A DNA stretch of 61,574 nt from Prasinococcaceae sp. CCMP 1430 (taxonomy: Eukaryota > Plantae > Prasinodermophyta). The position numbers and the translations under genes were made by a program. The DNA is taken from positions 1 to 61,574 of the forward strand of contig RQSC01000998.1 of NCBI GenBank assembly GCA_013416795.1. The letters are read 5' to 3'. This document shows positions 20,057 through 39,086 of this stretch, piece by piece (the stretch's first letter is position 1; each line of letters begins with the position of its first letter). The notes under the pieces are model-generated. The model worked only from the letters and a program-made list of their open reading frames with translations. It was not told the origin of the DNA and made no database searches.

Positions 20057-20797
20057 TGTAACATACGTCAGCGGCGCAGGTGCCCGCCTCGTACCACTGC
20101 AAGCCCTTATCTCCGCGCGATCCGCCGCGCACGCGCAAACCCTAAAGAGCGCCCACAACCCGAATGTATGACCGAAACTCCATGCCTTTGCACCATTGCT
20201 GAGCCCTCCGAGGCACGCGCCTTGAAGGCTCTGGCAAACTGTTTTTTCCCCAAATGGCTGTGCCAGCTGGCGCGGAGCGGCTCTTTCCGTGCACGGACGT
20301 TGCTGGGACGCCCGTGGGAGGACTCGAAGAGGGGTTCGAGCGGCCGCCGCCGGCCGCCGCGGCGCTGCCATCGTGCGGCGACAAAGACGAGCTCCGAGCG
20401 GGAGAGCATCCACGTGCCGCAAGGTCTGATGGTGGCATTTCATCCAGTCCAAACAATTGCATGCAGCGCACGCCCCCTCGCGAGGCGACGTCGAAAATTC
20501 CGTGGGACGGCGGCAATGCCTGCCGGATCGCGACCGCCCGACCGTTGCTTGCTCATCGGGCGTTCGCGTTTGGTGAGGGTCCTGAGCACCAGTTCCTACA
20601 CACGTTGTGTGTGGGGTGGTGGCAGCGCGCTGGCGCGCGACGGGAGCGCGGCGGGCACACGGGGCGCGGCTGGCGCGCCCGGGCAGGGGACCGGCGCGGG
20701 CCGAGGCTGCCTGCATCTGGAAAGCGGGGCGGCCGTGCCTCCAGTCTCTGTCGCGGAGGCGGCGGGGGATGGGAGGTCCGCGTGCGTGGGGCCCGCC

Positions 20798-23341
20798 ATG
20801 CCGTCGCCGCGCGCGCGCCCGCTCGGCGCGCCGCGTGGCTTTTTTCTGGGCGCGGCGGCTTGGACGCTGCTCGCCGGCGCACTCCTCCCCGAGGTGCTGG
20901 CAGGGCGCGCTCTGATGGAGGCGGAGAAGCCCGCGCCTGCCCCCGAGTTTGAGGAGGGCTGCACCCTCACCGGCGGAGAGTTCGTCCCCGTCGGCTGGTC
21001 GGGCATGGACACCGGCTCGAACGCTTGCAATTCGTGTGTTTGCGGTGCTCCGGAGCTCATGGCGTGCACTCTCGCCTTGTGCGGCGGTCGCAGACTGAGC
21101 GAGGCTCATGCGACGGAGGCGGAGAAGCCCGCGCCTGCGCCCGCCATCGAGGAGGGCTGCACCCTGACCGGCGGCGAGTTCGTCCCCGTCGGCTGGTCGG
21201 GCGAGGACACCGGCTCAAACTGGTGCAATGCCTGTACATGCGGTGCTTCAGAGCTCATGGCGTGCACTATCGCCTTCTGCGGGCCCCAGCCCGACGGCGA
21301 AGGCGACGACAACACAAACGCCGACGATGAGGGCTGCACGCTGACCGGCGGTGAGTTCGTCCCCGTCGGCTGGTCGGGCAAGGACACCGGCTCAAACTGG
21401 TGCAATTCGTGCATATGCTCCAAGCCAGATGTAATGGCGTGCACCCTCGCCTTCTGCTTCCCCCAGCCCGATGGCGATGGCGACGGCGACGCAAACGCCG
21501 ACGATGAGGGCTGCACGCTGACCGGCGGCGAGTTCGTCCCCGTCGGCTGGTCGGGCGAGGACACCGGCTCGAACTCGTGCAATTCTTGCGGATGCGAAGG
21601 CCCGGAGCTCCTGGCGTGCACGGACGCCTTCTGCGGCCCCCAGCCCGATGGCGATGGCGGCGGCGACGCAAACGACGACGATGAGGGCTGCACGCTGACC
21701 GGCGGCGAGTTCGTTCCCGTCGGCTGGTCGGGTAAGGACACAGGCTCGAACTCGTGCAATTCTTGCGGATGCGAAGGCCCGGAGCTCCTGGCGTGCACGG
21801 AGGAATTCTGCGCCAGGCGCAGACTCCAGCAGGACGCAGAGAAGCCCGCCCCCGCCCCCGCCCTGGACGAGACAGGCGAGACAGAGTCGCTGGGGGCGGA
21901 AGAGGGCTCGTGTACCCTCGACGGTGGGGAGATCGTCCCAGATGGCTGGTTTGGAAAAGGCTCGAGCTTCAACTGGTGCAATGATTGCCGGTGCGTCAAT
22001 GGCGTCCAACTTTGCACGAAGAAATTCTGCGGCGAGGAGGACGCTGGATCGAAACCTATGAAGAGGCGCGCGGCTGCTCGCCGGCACCTGCTTGACTCCG
22101 GAGCCCGCGGCGCCCGCAAGCTCTTGTCGCACGCATCCATCTGCCTCTGTCCCGAGGTAGCTGGGGATGCCAGGGTGTGTGGGAGCGACAACGTCACGTA
22201 CCAGAACGCGTGCTGGCTCGTGTGCCTAGGACACAGCAACGACGTGACCCTTCAGAGCGCAGGGCCGTGCCCAGTGAATACGCCCGAACCCGAGCGCCCG
22301 ACGCATCTTCTGCTGAACTTCACCGACCCGTTTCCAAACCCGACCGATGACTCAGCCCCTACCGTCCAGCCCGCCCCTGGGCCCCTTCCTGCCCCGGCAC
22401 CGCTGGCTGCCGCGGCTGTGGGGGAAGCCGAGGAAGCGCTCAGCGCTGTGTCCGTCAACGAGGACTTGGCATCGTCGTCCAACGAGCAGGCTTCCTCATC
22501 CGCCGGTGCAGGCGGTGCTCCCAAGTGCACCCTGGCCGATGGCTCCACCGTGGACGTAGGCTTCAAAGGCAATGACCAGCCCCCCAACGACTGCAACTTT
22601 TGCACATGTCAAATGGGGCCTGATGGCCCGGTCCTTGCGTGCACGGAGATCGCCTGCAGCGTCGGAGATCAAGGGGCGCCCGACCCCAACGGCGACGTGA
22701 CAAACTCAAGCGGTGGATCCGACGATGCGGACTGCACCTGCATCCTGCTCTGGGACCCCGTGTGCGGTGACGACGGAAAGACGTACTCAAACGACTGCTT
22801 CGCCACCTGTGATGGCAAAACGTCCGTCGCATCACGCGGAGCGTGCCCGGACGACACGTCCGACGACGCGGACAAGGACATTGACGAGTGCATATGCACC
22901 CTGCTTTATGACCCCGTATGCGGTGAGGATGGAAAGACGTACGGGAATGAGTGCTTCGCCACCTGTGATGGCATTGCTGTCGCATCTCCCGGAGCGTGCC
23001 CGGACGACACGTCCGACGACGCGGACTGCGCGTGCATCGAGCTCTGGGACCCCGTATGTGGTGACGACGGAAAGACGTACTCAAACGACTGCTTCGCCAC
23101 CTGTGATGGCAAAACGTCCGTCGCATCACGCGGAGCGTGCCCGGACGACACGTCCGACGACGCGGACAAGGACATTGACGAGTGCATATGCACCCTGCTT
23201 TATGACCCCGTATGCGGTGAGGATGGAAAGACGTACGGGAATGAGTGCTTCGCCACCTGTGATGGCATTGCTGTCGCATCTCCCGGAGCGTGCCCGGGCG
23301 ACACGTCGATCGCGGCGGCGGAGCCTGCCCCGGGAGACTAA
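20798..23341 (+). CDS. Secreted multidomain serine-protease-inhibitor precursor (7 pacifastin-like and 5 Kazal domains)
   Basis: Signal peptide ending LLPEVLAG; seven C-x(n)-CNxCxC-x(n)-CTxxxC modules; five CxC..VCGxDxxTYxNxC Kazal modules; internal 177-bp and 294-bp tandem units. Confidence 0.8.
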   Translation: MPSPRARPLGAPRGFFLGAAAWTLLAGALLPEVLAGRALMEAEKPAPAPEFEEGCTLTGGEFVPVGWSGMDTGSNACNSCVCGAPELMACTLALCGGRRLSEAHATEAEKPAPAPAIEEGCTLTGGEFVPVGWSGEDTGSNWCNACTCGASELMACTIAFCGPQPDGEGDDNTNADDEGCTLTGGEFVPVGWSGKDTGSNWCNSCICSKPDVMACTLAFCFPQPDGDGDGDANADDEGCTLTGGEFVPVGWSGEDTGSNSCNSCGCEGPELLACTDAFCGPQPDGDGGGDANDDDEGCTLTGGEFVPVGWSGKDTGSNSCNSCGCEGPELLACTEEFCARRRLQQDAEKPAPAPALDETGETESLGAEEGSCTLDGGEIVPDGWFGKGSSFNWCNDCRCVNGVQLCTKKFCGEEDAGSKPMKRRAAARRHLLDSGARGARKLLSHASICLCPEVAGDARVCGSDNVTYQNACWLVCLGHSNDVTLQSAGPCPVNTPEPERPTHLLLNFTDPFPNPTDDSAPTVQPAPGPLPAPAPLAAAAVGEAEEALSAVSVNEDLASSSNEQASSSAGAGGAPKCTLADGSTVDVGFKGNDQPPNDCNFCTCQMGPDGPVLACTEIACSVGDQGAPDPNGDVTNSSGGSDDADCTCILLWDPVCGDDGKTYSNDCFATCDGKTSVASRGACPDDTSDDADKDIDECICTLLYDPVCGEDGKTYGNECFATCDGIAVASPGACPDDTSDDADCACIELWDPVCGDDGKTYSNDCFATCDGKTSVASRGACPDDTSDDADKDIDECICTLLYDPVCGEDGKTYGNECFATCDGIAVASPGACPGDTSIAAAEPAPGD

Positions 23342-23457
23342 GCGAGCGAGAAAACACAACGCGCGGCGCGAAAGTAGGTCGCAGACACAGAGAGCGAAGT
23401 AACGGATGAGATAAATGGTAGGTGTACAACAATCGCGCGTCTCCCTACGCGCCCCCA

Positions 23458-26341
23458 TCACCGACGCGGCCCGACGGTGACTTTGGTGTCCTCTTGCACG
23501 GCGCGCTCGTAAGCAAATCTGTCCCTGTACGAGGCCGGCACGCGCGCAATGACAACGCCCTCGTTGCCGGGGTGCCCCCTCCACTCCACGCCAGCGCTCG
23601 ACAGAAAGCGGCGCACGGCGTCCTATGGCGGACCGAGCGGCGAGCGGCAGCAAGCGGATGGCAGGAGCGTTAGGACGGGGCGGAACCAGAGCGCAGCGCA
23701 GGCGAGCACACGCGCACACGTCGCGCAGACGGCGCACCCTGAGTACCCCGAAGCCGCCGCGGCTGTGCAACCCTTTGCCGGTGATGAAGTGAATCTCGAA
23801 GCTCTGTCCGGCCGCCACCAGCATCGAGAGCACCTTAAGCTGAGCGTTGACGATGCGGAGCGCCTCGGTGCGCTCCTGGCCGTGCAGGTCCACCTCGGTC
23901 TTATTAATCGTGTGGGCGTTGACATCACGGAACGTCGCCCGGCTCGCCGGCGCCGCAGTCTCCTTGAGCCTCGCATCGATCGCGGCGAGGCGCGAGCGTT
24001 TCTCGTCCTCGCCGCCTCCCGCCAACCCCCAGAAAATGTCCCTCTGCAGCTCGGCCTTCTCGGCCTTGAGCGCTTGCCGCTCGTGCTGGTGGACCTTGTA
24101 AGGAGACTCCACGTGCGCCTTCGCCATGCGCTTCCCCCTGGCGGCCCTCGCCCGCCTGGCGTCGATCTCGCTGCGCGACTGCGGAGGCAGCATCGCCGCG
24201 CCGTTCTCAGCCATGTCGCCCCAGTCCTGCGAATTCACCGCTGCGCGCACGTTCGCGGGCACTCGCGTGCCTGGCACGAGCTGTGGGCGCCCTCGCGCGT
24301 AGTCACTGGCGATGGCGGTCGCCGTGCGTCCGTCTCCTGTCTGCACCCTGTCCGCAGGCATCTCGCAAGCATCGTCGAGCGCGGTGCGGCTCGAGCTGCT
24401 CCCCGCGCGCTGAGGAGCAGGCACGCGCACCGGGGTGGGTCGGCTCTTCATGTTTCGAGCTCGAGCCTTGCCGCTGGCCGCACGCGTGCTGGCGCCCAAG
24501 GGGCGGTACTCGTCCGTGGCGTCGCCCAGCTGCTCCCCCAGCGCCTTCTGCGCCTCTTTCAGACTAAACCCATAGTCCTCAAGCACGCACTGCAGCACCT
24601 CGTCGCTGACCATTGGAAATCGTGAGCGAAGGTGCTCCACCTTGCGGGCTGTCGACTTGCTGCCGTGGACGCCCTGCCTCTGGCCACCCGAACCGCCCCT
24701 GCCGGCCTCGAGCATGGTGGGCCACTCCGACGCGGGCTCGTCCGCGAGCATGATGTACGGATTTGCTCGCATGCCCTCGTCTGCGTCTGCACCGGTGGCG
24801 GGGGGGTCGCCACTCGCCACTGCGTCATCATCCTCGTCGCCATCGTTTACGCCGAGGAGCTCAAGCGCTCCAAGGAGGTCGCCGCCCGCCGCCTGCAAAT
24901 AGAAAGTCAACTCATCCCGATCCTTGCCAGGGACCATCTCAGCGAGCTGCTGCAGGGCGTTTCCCCCGCCGTCGCCAGCTGAAGTCGCGTTCTCCACACG
25001 CATGGGCGCCGTAGCGCCGCTCAACAAGTCGCCGGAGGTGCTCAGGAAGTCAGGCCGGTCGTCGGCTTCGTCGAGCACGCTGAAAGGGTCCTCATCCTCG
25101 TCCTCGCTCTGGTTACAGGCATCGACGGCCTCAGCATTCTCGAAGTACTCGTCGGGACCGTCGGAGTCATACCAGTCGTCCATCGGGCTGCTCAGCTGAA
25201 TGAGCATGTCCAGCGTCTGCTGCACGTCGTTGCCGAATGCCATGAGCATGTCGGTCACCATGGCACTCTGTTCTGGGAACATTTCACGAAGCTTTTGCGC
25301 GTGCGCCACGGCCTCCTCCTCCTCGCTCGCGCGGATGGCTTCCTCCTCCTCCTTGCTCAGCTTGAGAGGCGAGCTACCGAGGCGAGTATCGCCGCCAAAG
25401 CGCACAGGATCACCATCGAGCATCAACTTAATTGCCGCTTCGGTGTGTTGGAAGTCGTATCCCTTGGCGGCCGCCACGTCTGCGATCATCACCGCCGCAG
25501 TTGGGTACAGCTCTTGCAACACACTGATGGTGGTCCGTTGGCTCTCTGTCAGGCCACCCACGACGCCGCTCGCAATTCCTTTGGACTCCTCCGAGATCTC
25601 AGCACCCGGGCGAGGCACGTGATGGTCGCGTCCATCCTCTACGAAGACGTACGGGTCATCGGAGCGACCATGCCCGGGGTATGCCCGTGTCACACCTGGG
25701 AGCACGCTCAGGTCTGGCCCATGGTCATTCACAGGCAGCCGCGGTACGAATGTGAACGGCGGCGGCTCCGCTCGTGCGGACGCGGGCGGCGGCGCACCCG
25801 ACCCCATTGCTGCCGCTGTGCGCGGCGACGGCGCCTGCAGCCGCTGTCTTGCAGACGCGTCATCCTCGTGCGTTTGCTGTCGCGTCTGCTGTGGCTGCGA
25901 GCTCGGCGGTGGCAAACTCGCCCCTCCTGTGTGACCGTCCCGCCCGCACGCCGCCTCTACACGCGCGTGCTCCGCGGTAGCGAGCTCCTGCTGCTTTCTC
26001 TCCACCGCCAGCGTCCAACACGGCCACCATCGCCTGTGCGGAGGCCTCGCGCCCACAGGCCTGGGCGGAACACTGACGCGGCGCATCTCCTCGAGGCGTT
26101 CGGCCGCCCCTTCTGAGAGCCGGCCGCGCAGGTTGCGCGACGGCGGCATCGGCGGTGCGCGGTGCGTGCGCTGCCAGGCGTACATGCCAAAGACGGGTGC
26201 GCTCCCTCTGTGCCCACGGCCGCGCGAGCGGCCCCCCCTGTCGCCTCCGCCTCGCGCCATTGCCGACCACCCCAAGCCCTCATCGCGCGAGCGTCTGTCC
26301 CGTGGCCCGCCCCCGCGCCCACCCCCGACGGCCTGCGCCAT
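23458..26341 (-). CDS. CUE/UBA-like repeats plus a C-terminal Smr endonuclease domain (N4BP2/Cue2/NONU-1-like); last intron 23737-23623
   Basis: EVDLHG and ITGKGLHS; the spliced exon gives DAVRRFL...NEGVV; several L.EMFP-type CUE-like helices upstream. Confidence 0.8.
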
Positions 26342-26639
26342 CGCCTCTGCACGCCGCCGCTACCTGCGGCGGGCAGGGCTGGCGATTGCGGCGCTTCAGT
26401 CCCTCGCCGCCCGCGTGCTCGCGCCGCCTCGCCTCGTTGTGCCCCGCGGCGGCCGCGGCGGCAGCCGCGGGGGGCGTGCGGCGCGCCTCGTGTGGTGGCA
26501 CGTGGGCGGGGATGAATTCAAAGGAAAGTCACATCGCTTCGGCACACGTGCACTCGTTGGCGCGCGCGGGCTGCCGCCACTTGACGCACGGCACGCCGGT
26601 GCGCGGCGCGGCACGGCGCTGCGGGGAGGCACGGCGTGC

Positions 26640-26986
26640 ATGCCGTCGTTGGGACTGCTCGCCAGTGCGGTCGGCGCGCTGGCGGCGTTCGCGCTGCAGG
26701 GCGCGCTGCAGCGCGCGGCGTGCGGCGCCAACGGCGGCTTCTGCGGGGCAGGCGCATGCAGCCGCGCGCGCGGAGCGCTCGAGGAGCAGCTCGTCGGGCA
26801 GGGCGCGGCGGTGGCGCAACTGGGCGATGCCGTGTGCGACCACCTCGACAGGGATGTGCCGCGGAGGAAGCCGCTCGTGCTCAGCCTGCATGGCCCGCCG
26901 GGAGTTGGCAAGTCGCTCACCCACGCGCTGCTCGCCCGCGCGCTGTACGACGCAGATGGCGCCGAGCGCACTCGCGCAGCGACTCG

Positions 26987-27033
<47 letters not shown>

Positions 27034-28085
27034 GAGGGCAGCAATCCTTGCCGTGTCCAGGGGTGGGGTGCCCCGCGTACCGAGTGGTGTTTGGAACGGA
27101 CTATGCGGCTGCGGAGCGCGGTGCACAGCTGCGCGCGCTGCGCTCGGCGCTTGGCGCTCACCTCGCGAAATACCCGCAGTCGCTGGTCGTCGTTGAGGAG
27201 TACGACAAGATGGACTGTGCGAGCCGCGCGCTGGTGCGCACGATGCTTGACGGCGGGGGCGCGGCGCCCACTCTCGGCGGGGACGACAACGGTGAGAGCG
27301 TGAGCATCGATCTGTCAGCGCCGCAGCGGCAATTTGGTGAGTCTATATTCGTTCTCGAGAGCAACGTCGGCTACCTCGACATCTACCGGCACGCTGAGGA
27401 CGCACGCGAGGGCGCTGGGGAGGAAGCTGAGAGCGAGACGCCCCTCTCGGACGAAGAGGCCGACCGCACGCTGAAAGACGCCGTCTTTGACTCGTGGCTG
27501 GCACAGGAATGTGAGAGCCGCGTTGACACGCAGCGGCTGCTGGGCCTCATCGACGCGTTCGTGCCGTTTCAGCCTCTGCGCCGCACCGACCTCGCCGAAC
27601 TTGCGCAGCGCCGGCTGGAGGTGCGGCGCCTGCTGGAGCTCGACAGGTTCGCACTGTCGTGGGAAGACTCCGTGCCCGACTGGCTCGCCGGGCGCGCCGA
27701 GTACGAGTACGTTGGGGGCTGGGCGATCGAGGGTGCGAAGGAGATTGACACCATCATCAGCAGGCACGTAACTCGCGCGCTTCGAGAGTGGGCGCGCTCG
27801 AAGGCGCTGCCCGAGCGCGAGAGGCATCCCCAGCACCGCGGCCTCTCGCTCGGTGCCACGCTGCGCGGTGCGGCTCTGGAGTACCTCCGAGGCGCTGGCG
27901 TGCTGCCAGAGGGTGAGGATGCCGTGAAGGCGGAGGAGCAGCACGAGGGTGAAAGCTCGGATGTGCCATCGGCGCGCCTCGTGGTGTACGACGGCAAGGT
28001 TCGCGCTATCGATGGGCCAACGAGAAGCGAGCGGGGTTTCGATGCCGGCGCCGAGTGCGACGCGGCCGCCCGCACAGCTGCGTGA
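26640..28085 (+). CDS. Torsin-family AAA+ ATPase with signal peptide
   Basis: LVGQ, KPLVLSLHGPPGVGKS (Walker A), VVEEYDKM (Walker B), IFVLESNVG, LIDAFVPFQPL and EGAK occur in the order seen in torsins. Confidence 0.8.
26988..27032 (+). repeat. (CAG)14CAA coding microsatellite, polyQ15
   Basis: Directly visible, just after Walker A of the torsin-like ORF. Confidence 0.95.
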
Positions 28086-36746: not shown

Positions 36747-38111
36747 CTACTTCTTGTCCTTCTTCGCTTTTTTCTCCTTCTTCTCCTTCTTCTCCTTCTT
36801 GTCCTTCTTCGCCTTCTTCGCGCTCTTCTCTTCGGCCCCGTCGTCGGCCTTCCGCTTCCTGTCCTTCGGTGTCACTGTCACGTCCGCGTCCGCGTTGTAC
36901 GCCGGCGCGGCGCCACCGTTCGGCGCGGCGCCACCATTCGCGGCGAGCGCGCCCTTGGCCGCCGCGCCGCCCGAGATGGCGGTGATGCCCTTGCCCTCCA
37001 GCTGCCTGAGGCGCGCCTCGACCTTTGCGCGCGACTCGATGCCCAGCGACGCGTCCGTCGACTCGCCGAGCGCGTCCACGCGGATCGACAGCGAGCACTT
37101 GGCCGCCAGCACGCGCGAGATTTTGCCCTTGAGCTTGGGCGCGCTCTGGCCGATGAGCGACGCGTGGTAGATGAGGCCGTACTTGGGCGTCTCGTGCTTG
37201 GTCTTGAGCGCGCGGAAGAGGGCCTTCTCGGCGCCGAGGATCTGCACGGTCGACGCGGGCTGCTTGGCCAGGTTGAGCAGCGAGCCGGCGTGGGAGATGA
37301 GGCGCGCGCCCACGAGCTCGCCCACGAGCACTGTGAGGTTGGGCGCGATGGCGGCCATGCGGCTCTTCAGGTAGTCGTACAGCTGCGCGCGGTACTCGGA
37401 GAGCGAGATCACCTGCTCGGCGAGCGCCTTGACGTGGTCGACGTCCTGCACGGAGATCTCCGTGCCCATCGACACGATGGAGGCCTCCTTGAGGGACGCC
37501 TCGGCCTCCTCGGTGAGGATGCCCGAGAAGTCCAGCTCGGCGGCGCGCTCGCGCGTGGACATGAACTGCACCGTCTTGGCGTACTCGATGTTGTCGGTGA
37601 TGATCTTGCCCATCTCCGGGAAGTGCCAGCCGTACCACTCGCGCACGCGCATGGCGTACGTGTTGAGCTCCTTGTCGAGCTCATCGAGCAGGCCGATGGC
37701 CTGGATGATCATGGTATCCACCTTCTCGGGCGAGAACTTGAGCTTGTAGCGCGACAGCGAGTGCGACAGGCCGAGCGCCATCGGGTGCAGGTCCTTCGCG
37801 CTCAGGTTGTCGGCGAGCTCGCCAAGCATGGAGCGGACGCCGCGGAGCAGCTCGAGCACGCTCTGCGAGTACACGCAGTTGATGCCGAGCTTCTCCTTGA
37901 TGACGCCGCCGAGTTTGGCGTCGAACACGCCGAGGGTGTCATCGTCGCCGACGTGCTTCTTCAGGAGCTTCTTCAAGCCCTTGGAGAGCTTGGAGTCGAC
38001 GAGCGCGGCCGCCGACGCGAGCGCGTCGGTGGTGTCCTCGAACTTGGAGAACGCCTTGAGCTTGAGCAGCTTCTGCGCCTTTTCGGGCGACTCGAAGTCC
38101 TTGGCGAGGTC
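36747..38111 (-). CDS. NOP58: Box C/D snoRNP protein NOP58 (first exon in the N gap)
   Basis: LGLSHSLSRYKLKFSP, REWYGWHFPE, PASTVQILGAEKALFRALK, TPKYGLIYH; KKE/D tail; acceptor CAG before 38111. Confidence 0.95.
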   Translation of the reverse strand, partial: DLAKDFESPEKAQKLLKLKAFSKFEDTTDALASAAALVDSKLSKGLKKLLKKHVGDDDTLGVFDAKLGGVIKEKLGINCVYSQSVLELLRGVRSMLGELADNLSAKDLHPMALGLSHSLSRYKLKFSPEKVDTMIIQAIGLLDELDKELNTYAMRVREWYGWHFPEMGKIITDNIEYAKTVQFMSTRERAAELDFSGILTEEAEASLKEASIVSMGTEISVQDVDHVKALAEQVISLSEYRAQLYDYLKSRMAAIAPNLTVLVGELVGARLISHAGSLLNLAKQPASTVQILGAEKALFRALKTKHETPKYGLIYHASLIGQSAPKLKGKISRVLAAKCSLSIRVDALGESTDASLGIESRAKVEARLRQLEGKGITAISGGAAAKGALAANGGAAPNGGAAPAYNADADVTVTPKDRKRKADDGAEEKSAKKAKKDKKEKKEKKEKKAKKDKK

Positions 38112-39086
38112 CTGCGGGGGCGCGGAGCGAGCGGGCACAGACGCCAGGGCCGCGATCGTCAGCATCGGCGCTCGGCGGTCGCATTCCCGCGCGCGCCCGC
38201 GCGGCGCGGCGCGACGGCCACGCCTCCCTACCCCCTACCCCACCGACCTACCCACCCACCCACCCACCCACCCTAAGCGCGCCGTGCCAGCGCGCCCCGC
38301 GGCGGGCGGGCGCGCGCCACANNNNNNNNNNNNNNNNNNNNNNNNNNNNNNNNNNNNNNNNNNNNNNNNNNNNNNNNNNNNNNNNNNNNNNNNNNNNNNN
38401 NNNNNNNNNNNNNNNNNNNNNNNNNNNNNNNNNNNNNNNNNNNNNNNNNNNNNNNNNNNNNNNNNNNNNNNNNNNNNNNNNNNNNNNNNNNNNNNNNNNN
38501 NNNNNNNNNNNNNNNNNNNNNNNNNNNNNNNNNNNNNNNNNNNNNNNNNNNNNNNNNNNNNNNNNNNNNNNNNNNNNNNNNNNNNNNNNNNNNNNNNNNN
38601 NNNNNNNNNNNNNNNNNNNNNNNNNNNNNNNNNNNNNNNNNNNNNNNNNNNNNNNNNNNNNNNNNNNNNNNNNNNNNNNNNNNNNNNNNNNNNNNNNNNN
38701 NNNNNNNNNNNNNNNNNNNNNNNNNNNNNNNNNNNNNNNNNNNNNNNNNNNNNNNNNNNNNNNNNNNNNNNNNNNNNNNNNNNNNNNNNNNNNNNNNNNN
38801 NNNNNNNNNNNNNNNNNNNNNNNNNNNNNNNNNNNNNNNNNNNNNNNNNNNNNNNNNNNNNNNNNNNNNNNNNNNNNNNNNNNNNNNNNNNNNNNNNNNN
38901 NNNNNNNNNNNNNNNNNNNNNNNNNNNNNNNNNNNNNNNNNNNNNNNNNNNNNNNNNNNNNNNNNNNNNNNNNNNNNNNNNNNNNNNNNNNNNNNNNNNN
39001 GACGCGCACGCGCCGCGCGGCGCCGCGCGGGCAGCTCGGTTGGGCCCGCTCGGGCCGAGCCACAGCCGGCCGACCCGACCATAGCC

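What the first reader, a model, noticed from the sequence alone, without database searches (positions are those of the whole stretch)
20798..23341. Pacifastin-like plus Kazal protease-inhibitor polyprotein with diversified reactive sites and RxxL processing motifs
Seen: a signal peptide, seven 6-Cys modules matching C..CNxCxC..CTxxxC, and five Kazal modules. At the candidate P1 position the pacifastin-like modules read CTL, CTI, CTL, CTD, CTE, CTK and CTE; the Kazal P1 residues are E, L, L, E and L. Blocks are separated by RALM, RRLS, RRLQ, RHLL and RKLL, three of which are soon followed by a repeated AEKPAPAP. Known: pacifastins (MEROPS I19) are arthropod inhibitors made as multi-domain precursors, with P1 directly after CT; RxxL/RxLx motifs are subtilase (S1P-type) sites. 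Inference: this is an algal precursor cut into a panel of inhibitors against proteases of different specificity, possibly for defence against grazers or pathogens. I know of no description of this architecture in algae.
Basis: partly seen in the sequence, partly recalled or inferred. Interest (0 to 1): 0.8.

Follow-up and report, generated by a model that had tools for sequence, protein, structure and literature searches.

The report
Algal secreted multi-headed protease inhibitor gene
A marine green picoalga expresses one intron-less gene for a secreted protein carrying seven pacifastin-like and five Kazal protease-inhibitor domains, which extends a domain family recently reported as absent from plants into the green lineage; inhibition and processing are untested.

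Summary
Window 20798-23341(+) is one transcribed, unspliced ORF of 847 aa.

The six-Cys modules hit Pfam Pacifastin_I (65 bits summed; 20.7-30.2 bits for the four modules scanned singly). A profile built from them finds solved locust pacifastins. The AF2 model (pLDDT 90.8) superposes on PMP-C at 1.6 Å.

They are the long-N-terminus "ancestral" pacifastin-like type described in 2026 for metazoa, fungi and bacteria. That type also relates to the N-terminal half of VWC, but these modules lack the VWC second half.

About 585 protein clusters carry the module, including choanoflagellate and diplonemid proteins. Their partner domains are mainly other inhibitor families (Kazal, Kunitz, TIL, TIMP).

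The protein is most likely a secreted compound serine-protease inhibitor. Processing at RxLL or dibasic sites is plausible but untested and is not shared by relatives. Positive selection is not shown (dN/dS < 1).

Novelty is modest: a new member of a known kind, in a lineage where the family was reported absent. Multi-Kazal proteins were already known in green algae. The scan holds no earlier pacifastin finding in this genome.

The parts
20798..23341 (+). Complete single-exon CDS (847 aa plus stop) of the secreted compound inhibitor
   Evidence: ORF and translation. RNA contigs are colinear from 20840 to about 23409 with no joints. A TARA gene call has an identical N-terminus.
20798..20902 (+). 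Predicted signal peptide (aa 1-35): Arg-rich n-region, hydrophobic core at aa 14-30, V-L-A before the likely cut
   Evidence: Kyte-Doolittle profile. No dedicated predictor was available, so this is an inference.
20960..21082 (+). Pacifastin-like domain 1 (Cys1-Cys6); reactive loop C-T-L-A-L-C
   Evidence: Pacifastin_I 20.7 bits alone. AF2 model pLDDT 90.8.
21158..21280 (+). Pacifastin-like domain 2; C-T-I-A-F-C (Val at P1 in the TARA variant)
   Evidence: (22.7 bits).
21335..21457 (+). Pacifastin-like domain 3; C-T-L-A-F-C
21512..21634 (+). Pacifastin-like domain 4; C-T-D-A-F-C. One 59-aa module-plus-linker unit (deletion placed at aa 218-276) is missing from the TARA variant, which lacks the C-T-D-A-F-C loop.
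21689..21811 (+). Pacifastin-like domain 5; C-T-E-E-F-C
21911..22030 (+). Pacifastin-like domain 6; C-T-K-K-F-C. The only module that passes the Pfam cut-off on its own.
   Evidence: 30.2 bits against a cut-off of 27.9.
22526..22657 (+). Pacifastin-like domain 7 (divergent, longer Cys4-Cys5 loop); C-T-E-I-A-C
   Evidence: 21.0 bits.
22142..22270 (+). Kazal domain 1 (P1 Glu)
22733..22846 (+). Kazal domain 2 (non-classical C-x-C type, P1 Leu)
22889..22999 (+). Kazal domain 3 (P1 Leu); closest solved relative is the leech tryptase inhibitor LDTI, E 8.9e-11
23027..23140 (+). Kazal domain 4 (P1 Glu); a copy of domain 2 that differs at Thr>Ala and at P1 Leu>Glu
23183..23293 (+). Kazal domain 5 (P1 Leu); identical to domain 3 at the DNA level
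22727..23297 (+). Two copies of a 294-bp tandem duplication (Kazal 2+3 and Kazal 4+5). Positions 22766-23003 equal 23060-23297 exactly; the six differences all lie in 22726-22765.
   Evidence: The junction 22997-23160 appears in a metatranscriptome contig with no mismatches. The duplication is absent from the TARA variant.
21089..21100 (+). RRLS in the linker after domain 1 (a dibasic or RxLx candidate cleavage site), followed by AEKPAPAP at 21119-21142
   Evidence: Sequence only.
21818..21829 (+). RRLQ (within ARRRLQQ) after domain 5, followed by AEKPAPAP at 21836-21859
22082..22126 (+). RHLL ... RKLL in the basic linker between domain 6 and Kazal 1. These are the two motifs that fit the plant RRLL/RKLL subtilase processing consensus.
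   Evidence: The motif literature is cited.
22271..22525 (+). 85-aa Pro/Ala/Ser-rich linker (contains NFT and PAPAP); exonic, not an intron
   Evidence: RNA contig 21772-22795 is colinear with the genome and has no gaps.

Best explanation
This is a native, expressed nuclear gene of a GC-rich marine green picoalga. A scan note names it Prasinoderma coloniale, and the GC content fits.

The gene encodes a secreted 'beads-on-a-string' protein with twelve small disulfide-rich heads joined by acidic or Pro-rich linkers. Seven heads are pacifastin-like domains of the long-N-terminus ('ancestral') type. Five are non-classical Kazal domains.

Each head would present a canonical substrate-like loop. In the pacifastin-like heads this is Cys5-Thr-P1-P1'-x-Cys6. 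In the Kazal heads it is Cys2-P2-P1-P1'. The loop would dock into the active site of a serine protease (standard Laskowski mechanism).

The P1 set is Leu/Ile, Lys and Asp/Glu. One molecule could therefore cover chymotrypsin-, subtilisin- or elastase-like, trypsin-like and acid-preferring (Glu-specific or subtilase) enzymes. The targets could be the alga's own secreted proteases or those of bacteria and grazers.

Shown here: the gene model, transcription, domain identities, the predicted fold, the distribution of relatives and their inhibitor-rich partner domains.

Inferred: secretion, inhibitory activity, the targets, and any cleavage at the basic linkers.
For: - Pfam: Kazal_2 1.9e-31, Kazal_1 1.5e-27, Pacifastin_I 3.9e-18 with 7 stretches, and no VWC hit. 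Single modules score best against Pacifastin_I.
- A profile of 29 modules finds 12 solved pacifastin sequences (E 0.008-0.16) aligned from Cys2 to Cys6.
- hhalign against conventional short-loop pacifastin domains gives 96.1% probability, E 3.7e-9 and 48% identity.
- The AF2 model has pLDDT 90.8. It fits PMP-C bound to chymotrypsin at rmsd 1.6 Å over 36 columns, TM 0.72-0.74 by target. It fits a pacifastin at Z 3.4, rmsd 1.8 Å over 33 of 34 residues. It fits bacterial 'Pacifastin domain-containing' clusters in the ESM Atlas at TM 0.86.
- Asn after Cys2 and Thr after Cys5 are present in 7 of 7 modules, and in 221 and 198 of 255 family modules.
- Among 101 proteins carrying the module, the non-PLD partners are chiefly inhibitor families: Kazal 9, Kunitz 5, TIL 1, TIMP 1. 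One relative combines PLD, Kazal and Kunitz.
- Amino-acid change among modules 1-5 is concentrated between Cys2 and Cys6: dN 0.266 against 0.041 in the N-terminal half.
- The Kazal heads match the inhibitors LDTI and ovomucoid.
- RNA: colinear contigs in two runs that also carry a spliced neighbouring gene, plus pieces in a marine metatranscriptome.
- The neighbours are ordinary eukaryotic genes, and the same DENN neighbour lies beside the gene in the TARA scaffold.
Against: - No biochemical evidence exists for any long-N-terminus pacifastin-like domain. The 2026 survey is computational.
- Single modules mostly fall below the Pfam cut-off.
- All structural matches are statistically weak because the domain has only 47 residues. 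The top VIA matches are fibronectin type I modules (Z 4.4), which are not inhibitors.
- The module is also related to the VWC N-terminal subdomain (93%), a binding or matrix module.
- Kazal-like domains in agrin, follistatin and RECK do not act as inhibitors (those proteins appear among the hits).
- dN/dS stays below 1.
- Disulfide connectivity and loop geometry could not be inspected.
- The signal peptide was judged by eye only.
Confidence: 0.62

Rival explanations
1. The protein is a polyprotein precursor. After secretion it is cut at the basic R-x-L-x or dibasic linkers by a subtilase (S1P/SBT6.1-like or kexin-like). The fragments would be module 1, modules 2-5, module 6, and Kazal 1 through Kazal 5, acting as separate inhibitors. 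This refines the best explanation rather than excluding it.
For: - RHLL and RKLL match the RRLL/RKLL processing motifs of plant pro-pectin-methylesterases, and S1P cuts RALF23.
- RR, RRR and KRR occur only in three of the twelve inter-domain linkers, exactly where linker type changes.
- According to PMC13388995, arthropod pacifastin linkers are enriched in dibasic cleavage motifs and are probably processed.
- Other notes of this scan report subtilases in the same genome (unchecked).
Against: - The evidence is motifs only.
- RALM, RRLS and RRLQ belong to one repeated linker unit ending in AEKPAPAP, so they are not independent occurrences.
- RALM abuts the signal-peptide cut.
- P1 residues Ser, Gln and Met are atypical for S1P sites.
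- Close relatives have no such linkers.
- The 2026 survey finds low processing potential in the ancestral class.
- The PAPAP stretches could instead be hydroxyproline-glycosylation sites, which are typical of green-lineage wall proteins (own knowledge).
Confidence: 0.25
2. The protein is a structural or adhesive component of the cell wall or colony matrix. On this reading the six-Cys modules act as FnI- or VWC-like binding modules, the Pro/Ala-rich linkers are glycosylated spacers, and the inhibitor-like loops have no protease target.
For: - The best whole-module structural matches are fibronectin type I and mucin/VWF modules (Z 4.1-4.4).
- hhalign relates the module, including its N-terminal hairpin, to VWC.
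- PMC13388995 interprets the ancestral class as matrix-embedded.
- The linkers contain AP-rich motifs, and one relative carries a transmembrane anchor.
Against: - The fusion partners across the family are overwhelmingly bona fide inhibitor domains rather than adhesion domains.
- Thr at P2 and the C-T-x3-C loop are conserved.
- Variation clusters on the loop side of the module.
- Five Kazal heads of the LDTI type are retained.
- The VWC second subdomain is absent.
Confidence: 0.13

Closest known systems
[quoted passage not shown]
   Same: - Six-Cys core with Cys2-Asn and the Cys5-x-P1-P1'-x-Cys6 loop.
- Long Gly- and aromatic-rich N-terminal hairpin.
- Tandem arrays inside multidomain secreted proteins that also carry Kazal or Kunitz domains.
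- A family P1/P1' profile rich in Lys, Glu and Met.
   Different: - That survey lists metazoa, fungi and bacteria and states the family is absent from plants. This one is in a green-lineage alga, with relatives in choanoflagellates, diplonemids and many uncultured marine eukaryotes.
- The Cys1-Cys2 spacing here is 20-22 residues, at or just beyond the 13-20 residues the paper gives for the N-terminal extension.
- Some linkers here are basic.
Locust and crayfish pacifastins (PMP-C/LCMI-II, SGCI, SGTI, pacifastin light chain; MEROPS I19, Pfam PF05375)
   Same: - The motif C-N-x-C-x-C ... C-T-P1-P1'-x-C.
- The Leu-type reactive loop (PMP-C, as aligned, has C-T-L-x-A-C; module 1 has C-T-L-A-L-C).
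- Multi-domain precursors.
- The model superposes at 1.6-1.8 Å.
   Different: - The arthropod domains have a short Cys1-Cys2 loop (9-12 residues) and no N-terminal hairpin.
- Their inhibition and processing are established experimentally (prior knowledge and the pacifastin review literature); both are untested here.
Multi-domain Kazal inhibitors of green algae (Chlamydomonas, Volvox) and, from own knowledge, oomycete EPI1/EPI10 and apicomplexan TgPI
   Same: - Tandem Kazal heads in a secreted protist or algal protein. Multi-Kazal proteins are documented in chlorophytes (PMC4189545).
- Acidic P1 residues occur in the oomycete subtilase inhibitors (own knowledge).
   Different: None of those is described with pacifastin-like domains. 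MEROPS family I19 is not listed for Viridiplantae in PMC4189545.
VWC (chordin-like cysteine-rich) domain, N-terminal subdomain
   Same: The hairpin with G-x-x-[VY]-x-x-G-W, followed by C-x2-C-x-C ... C-x4-C. hhalign gives 93% probability over 35 columns.
   Different: - There is no second subdomain (no C-C-x2-C) and there are only 6 Cys.
- The window protein has no Pfam VWC hit.
- It has the pacifastin-type Asn and Thr.

Membership tests
Pacifastin (Pfam PF05375, MEROPS I19) | HMM score above the curated cut-off | tested here: met
   The whole protein scores 65.3 bits against a cut-off of 27.9, with 7 stretches. The four modules scanned alone score 20.7, 22.7, 30.2 and 21.0 bits, so only module 6 passes on its own.
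Pacifastin (Pfam PF05375, MEROPS I19) | Core motif Cys2-Asn-x-Cys3-x-Cys4 ... Cys5-Thr-x3-Cys6 | tested here: met
   Present in 7 of 7 modules. A Gly lies in the Cys4-Cys5 loop in 6 of 7 modules.
Pacifastin (Pfam PF05375, MEROPS I19) | Short Cys1-Cys2 loop of 9-12 residues (conventional arthropod architecture) | tested here: not met
   The spacing is 20-22 residues in all seven modules. This matches the extended 'ancestral' architecture of PMC13388995, not the conventional one.
Pacifastin (Pfam PF05375, MEROPS I19) | Fold: small antiparallel beta-sheet superposable on solved pacifastins | tested here: inconclusive
   The model has pLDDT 90.8. It fits PMP-C at rmsd 1.6 Å over 36 columns but with Foldseek E 1.6. 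VIA Z is 3.4, below the FnI matches at 4.4. The Atlas gives TM 0.86 to bacterial pacifastin-annotated clusters.
Pacifastin (Pfam PF05375, MEROPS I19) | Disulfide pattern 1-4, 2-6, 3-5 | not testable with these tools
   The model coordinates are not exposed.
Pacifastin (Pfam PF05375, MEROPS I19) | Tight-binding inhibition of serine proteases through the Cys5-Cys6 loop | not testable with these tools
   This needs recombinant protein and enzyme assays.
Kazal (Pfam PF00050/PF07648, MEROPS I1) | HMM match, six Cys, the P-V-C-G-x-D-G-x-T-Y core, and similarity to solved inhibitors | tested here: met
   Kazal_2 scores 108.3 bits and Kazal_1 95.8 bits, with 5 stretches each. LDTI matches at E 8.9e-11 and ovomucoid at 1.8e-11. 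The domains are the non-classical C-x-C subtype.
VWC (Pfam PF00093) | Ten Cys, including the second subdomain with C-C-x2-C | tested here: not met
   The modules end at Cys6 and are followed by acidic linkers. There is no VWC hit at E <= 1. Only the N-terminal subdomain is related.
Fibronectin type I module | Four-Cys pattern (1-3, 2-4) and an HMM match | tested here: not met
   The modules have six Cys. Only module 6 gives a weak FnI_RECK hit (E 0.058). The resemblance is structural only (Z 4.4).
S1P- or subtilase-processed precursor (plant RRLL/RKLL type) | R-x-[LIV]-[L..] motif in an accessible linker | tested here: inconclusive
   RHLL and RKLL fit the motif. RALM, RRLS and RRLQ fit only loosely.
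S1P- or subtilase-processed precursor (plant RRLL/RKLL type) | Demonstrated cleavage products | not testable with these tools
   This needs N-terminomics or a western blot.

The most novel reading that the evidence does not exclude
A deep-branching green picoalga secretes, at a high level, a polyprotein that subtilases cut at RxLL or dibasic linkers. The cuts would release a cocktail of up to twelve canonical inhibitors with deliberately different P1 specificities. Copy number and P1 residues would vary between natural populations. The cocktail would be an extracellular anti-protease defence against bacteria, grazers or parasites, assembled independently of the arthropod pacifastin system.
Probability: 0.15. 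Interest if true: 0.65.

Novelty: new member of a known kind. Interest (0 to 1): 0.45.

Why it matters
The finding places pacifastin-like domains in the green lineage and in several free-living marine protists, which contradicts the recent statement that the family is absent from plants. The long-N-terminus form recurs in fusions with Kazal, Kunitz, TIL and TIMP domains, and this is the best available indirect argument that these 'ancestral' domains are real inhibitors.

The gene is short, intron-less and transcribed, and its modules are about 45 residues long. It is therefore a convenient system for the first biochemical test of that class. Extracellular protease control in picophytoplankton is almost unstudied.

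Tried and rejected
- **Single-sequence PDB search.** Searching the N-terminal half against PDB found no pacifastin. Only the 29-module profile did.
- **The search for related loci.** It failed with the module alignment because no conserved stretch was available. With the whole protein in genome contigs it found nothing. That collection holds only bacteria and archaea, so the blank says nothing about eukaryotes.
- **ESM Atlas search by features.** The whole protein gave no usable hit.
- **Foldseek against PDB.** No match reached E <= 0.001. All structural statistics are weak for a 47-residue domain.
- **Positive selection on the reactive loop.** Rejected as unproven. dN is 6.5-fold higher in the Cys2-Cys6 half, but dS is higher there too and omega is 0.40. 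Gene conversion keeping the N-terminal half uniform is an equally good reading.
- **The six differences at the start of the Kazal duplication.** These include synonymous changes, so they point to a mosaic history rather than a clean signal at P1.
- **PEXEL/TEXEL-like reading.** RALME, RRLSE, RRLQQ and RHLLD all fit RxLx[EQD]. I dropped this reading because three of the four are copies of one linker unit and no such export pathway is known in green algae.
- **Linker aa 492-576 as an intron.** Rejected, because an RNA contig spans it colinearly.
- **The low-GC dip at 38-40 kb.** It is an assembly gap of N.
- **Organism name.** It rests on another agent's note plus GC content and was not verified independently.
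Full report
**What is there**

The window averages about 68% GC. Its longest + strand ORF in this region runs 20168-23341. Translating from the ATG at 20798 gives 847 aa.

A regex scan finds seven modules of the form C-x20-22-C-N-x-C-x-C-x6-10-C-T-x3-C. After Cys5 they read CTL, CTI, CTL, CTD, CTE, CTK and CTE. The scan also finds five Kazal-pattern modules whose P1 residues (second residue after Cys2) are E, L, L, E, L.

The protein has 72 Cys, exactly six per domain. The N-terminus has three Arg, a hydrophobic core at aa 14-30 and V-L-A before the likely cut. The C-terminus has no hydrophobic tail. No paralogue lies elsewhere in the window.

**Gene model and expression**

Contigs of two runs of 'organism A' cover 20840 to about 23409 colinearly, with no joints. 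Nothing lies upstream of 20768, and only thin coverage lies downstream. The same two runs carry a 115-nt spliced joint (23621>23737, CT..AC, which is GT..AG on the minus strand) in the convergent neighbouring gene, so they hold RNA.

One 1024-nt contig (21772-22795) spans module 6, Kazal 1, the 85-aa Pro-rich linker, module 7 and the start of Kazal 2. The linker is therefore exonic.

A related 'organism B' has 2-, 2- and 11-nt indels at 20751-20764. That region is therefore non-coding, and 20798 is the first in-frame ATG in the transcribed region.

A bona fide marine metatranscriptome holds pieces at 95-100% identity. One piece is the Kazal 3>Kazal 4 junction (22997-23160) with no mismatch.

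Depth over the gene is 20-50 times that over the neighbour in these contig sets. The tool warns that contig depth is a poor measure of expression, so this is only suggestive.

**A natural variant**

A TARA metagenome scaffold encodes a 690-aa version (P0001) with the same N-terminus and the same upstream DENN gene. The flanking DNA is 99.4% identical.

The variant differs by ten substitutions, one of them at a P1 position (module 2, Ile>Val). It also lacks one module-plus-linker unit (59 aa) and one 294-nt Kazal 2+3 unit. This could be real copy-number variation or short-read collapse of tandem repeats. The metatranscriptome junction contig shows that the five-Kazal form exists in nature.

**What the six-Cys modules are**

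- *Sequence.* Pfam gives Pacifastin_I 3.9e-18 (65.3 bits summed, cut-off 27.9) and no VWC hit. Four modules were scanned alone. They score 20.7-30.2 bits, always best against Pacifastin_I, and match profile positions 5-10 to 32-36, which is Cys2 to Cys6.
- *Profile against PDB.* A profile of 29 modules from this protein and two relatives (A1) retrieves twelve distinct solved pacifastin sequences (SGPI-1, LCMI-II/PMP-C, SGTI and others) at E 0.008-0.16. VWF scores only 0.79.
- *Structure.* AF2 folds module 1 at pLDDT 90.8 as a five-strand mini-sheet.
  - Foldseek finds nothing significant. PMP-C from its chymotrypsin complex superposes at 1.6 Å over 36 columns with 36% identity.
  - The exhaustive VIA search ranks fibronectin type I modules first (Z 4.4, 46 residues). 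Mucin/VWF modules follow (4.1), then a pacifastin (Z 3.4, 1.8 Å over 33 of 34 residues) and VWC (3.1).
  - In the ESM Atlas the best matches (TM 0.86, 46 residues, 1.3 Å) are bacterial clusters auto-named 'Pacifastin domain-containing protein'.
- *Profile against profile.* I compared A1 with 57 conventional short-loop pacifastin domains and 92 full VWC domains, both taken from the search hits.
  - A1 against conventional pacifastin: 96.1%, E 3.7e-9, 48% identity over the core.
  - A1 against VWC: 93.1%, 35 columns, including the N-terminal hairpin.
  - Conventional pacifastin against VWC: 96.1%.

The three are therefore one superfamily. The algal module has a pacifastin core (Asn after Cys2, Thr after Cys5, ending at Cys6) plus a VWC-like N-terminal hairpin.

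This is the 'ancestral' architecture described in PMC13388995 (Sci Rep 2026) for metazoa, fungi and bacteria. That paper reports Kazal and Kunitz among the partner domains, and a family P1/P1' profile rich in Lys-Met and Glu.

My alignment of 255 unique modules gives the same picture. Thr after Cys5 occurs in 198 of 255. P1 is Lys in 63, Glu in 41, Leu in 37 and Arg in 32. P1' is Met in 87.

**Distribution**

An exhaustive profile search of 1.84 billion representatives finds 585 clusters at E <= 1e-3 and 177 at E <= 1e-10.

The named sources are a choanoflagellate (Didymoeca costata, three proteins, one of them PLD+Kazal) and a diplonemid (Sulcionema specki). The rest come from TARA, ENA, JGI and Logan assemblies.

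Among 101 proteins with at least one full-length module, the partner domains are Kazal (9), Kunitz (5), TIL (1), TIMP (1) and little else. One relative combines PLD, Kazal and Kunitz. A metazoan-type protein combines 19 PLD with 16 WAP domains. This recurrent fusion to bona fide inhibitor families is the main indirect argument for an inhibitory role.

**The Kazal heads**

They are robust Kazal domains: Kazal_2 1.9e-31, LDTI E 8.9e-11 and ovomucoid 1.8e-11. They belong to the non-classical C-x-C subtype.

Kazal 2+3 and Kazal 4+5 form a 294-bp tandem duplication. The copies are identical over 238 nt and differ at six positions within the first 40 nt. Those differences include Thr>Ala, P1 Leu>Glu (CTG>GAG) and two synonymous changes in the coding part.

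**Diversification**

Among modules 1-5 the N-terminal half has dN 0.041 and dS 0.277. The Cys2-Cys6 half has dN 0.266 and dS 0.666.

Amino-acid change is therefore concentrated on the putative binding side: P1, P1', P2', the Cys4-Cys5 loop and the Cys3-x-Cys4 position. But omega is below 1 and dS differs between the halves too. Relaxed constraint or patchy gene conversion explains this as well as selection does.

**Processing**

Twelve inter-domain linkers exist. Basic residues occur in three of them. One follows module 1 (GGRRLSE...). One follows module 5 (ARRRLQQ...). One lies between module 6 and Kazal 1 (KRR...RRHLLD...RKLLS).

RHLL and RKLL fit the RRLL/RKLL subtilase processing motifs of plant pro-pectin-methylesterases. 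RR and KRR would equally suit a kexin-type enzyme.

RALM, RRLS and RRLQ belong to one repeated linker unit that ends in AEKPAPAP, so they are not independent. Close relatives have neutral or acidic linkers without such motifs. The 2026 survey finds low processing potential in this class.

Cleavage is possible but unproven. From own knowledge, the AP-rich stretches could equally be hydroxyproline-glycosylation sites typical of green-lineage wall proteins.

**Context and organism**

The neighbours are a DENN gene, a CUE-domain gene, a torsin-like ATPase and a UbiA prenyltransferase. None is functionally linked, so this is a native nuclear gene.

Another agent's note names the genome Prasinoderma coloniale. 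The published GC of 69.8% fits. I did not verify the name independently.

The genome paper does not mention Kazal, pacifastin or protease inhibitors. Multi-Kazal proteins are already documented in chlorophytes, and MEROPS I19 is not listed for Viridiplantae (PMC4189545). PMC13388995 states explicitly that the family is absent from plants.

**Verdict**

The protein is most likely (about 0.6) a secreted compound serine-protease inhibitor.

This is a new member, in a new lineage, of a kind described in 2026, and not a new architecture class.

Noticed in passing
window 26133-28082 (+): An ORF with a Torsin-family / AAA_16 match (E 4.4e-7).
   Followed up: no
window ~38330-39000: The apparent low-GC dip at 38-40 kb is a run of N (an assembly gap). 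It lies between a Nop56/58-like ORF (36747-38165, minus strand; named from reading its translation) and a GC-rich region.
   Followed up: partly
window 23621-23737 (-): A 115-nt GT..AG intron of the convergent CUE-domain gene, confirmed by RNA contigs in two runs. The 3' ends of that transcript and the inhibitor transcript abut near 23400-23490.
   Followed up: partly
P0018 (Logan contig, 359 aa): A secreted protein from an uncultured eukaryote that combines four pacifastin-like modules, one Kazal domain and one Kunitz/BPTI domain (E 1.4e-19). This is a three-family compound inhibitor.
   Followed up: partly
L002 6001-7992 and 8930-11446: Two adjacent genes (663 and 838 aa) that consist almost entirely of 11 and 13 pacifastin-like modules. 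They lie on a 1.24-Mb eukaryotic contig near a calpain gene.
   Followed up: no
P0014 (JGI, 412 aa): A protein with seven pacifastin-like modules that ends in a hydrophobic segment followed by KRR. It looks like a membrane-anchored version of the array.
   Followed up: no
P0046, P0023, P0056 (metagenomic, metazoan-type): In these proteins the same stretches hit Pfam Pacifastin_I, VWC, FnI_RECK and VWF models at once. These Pfam families therefore overlap in sequence space, and single-model annotations of such repeats are unreliable.
   Followed up: partly
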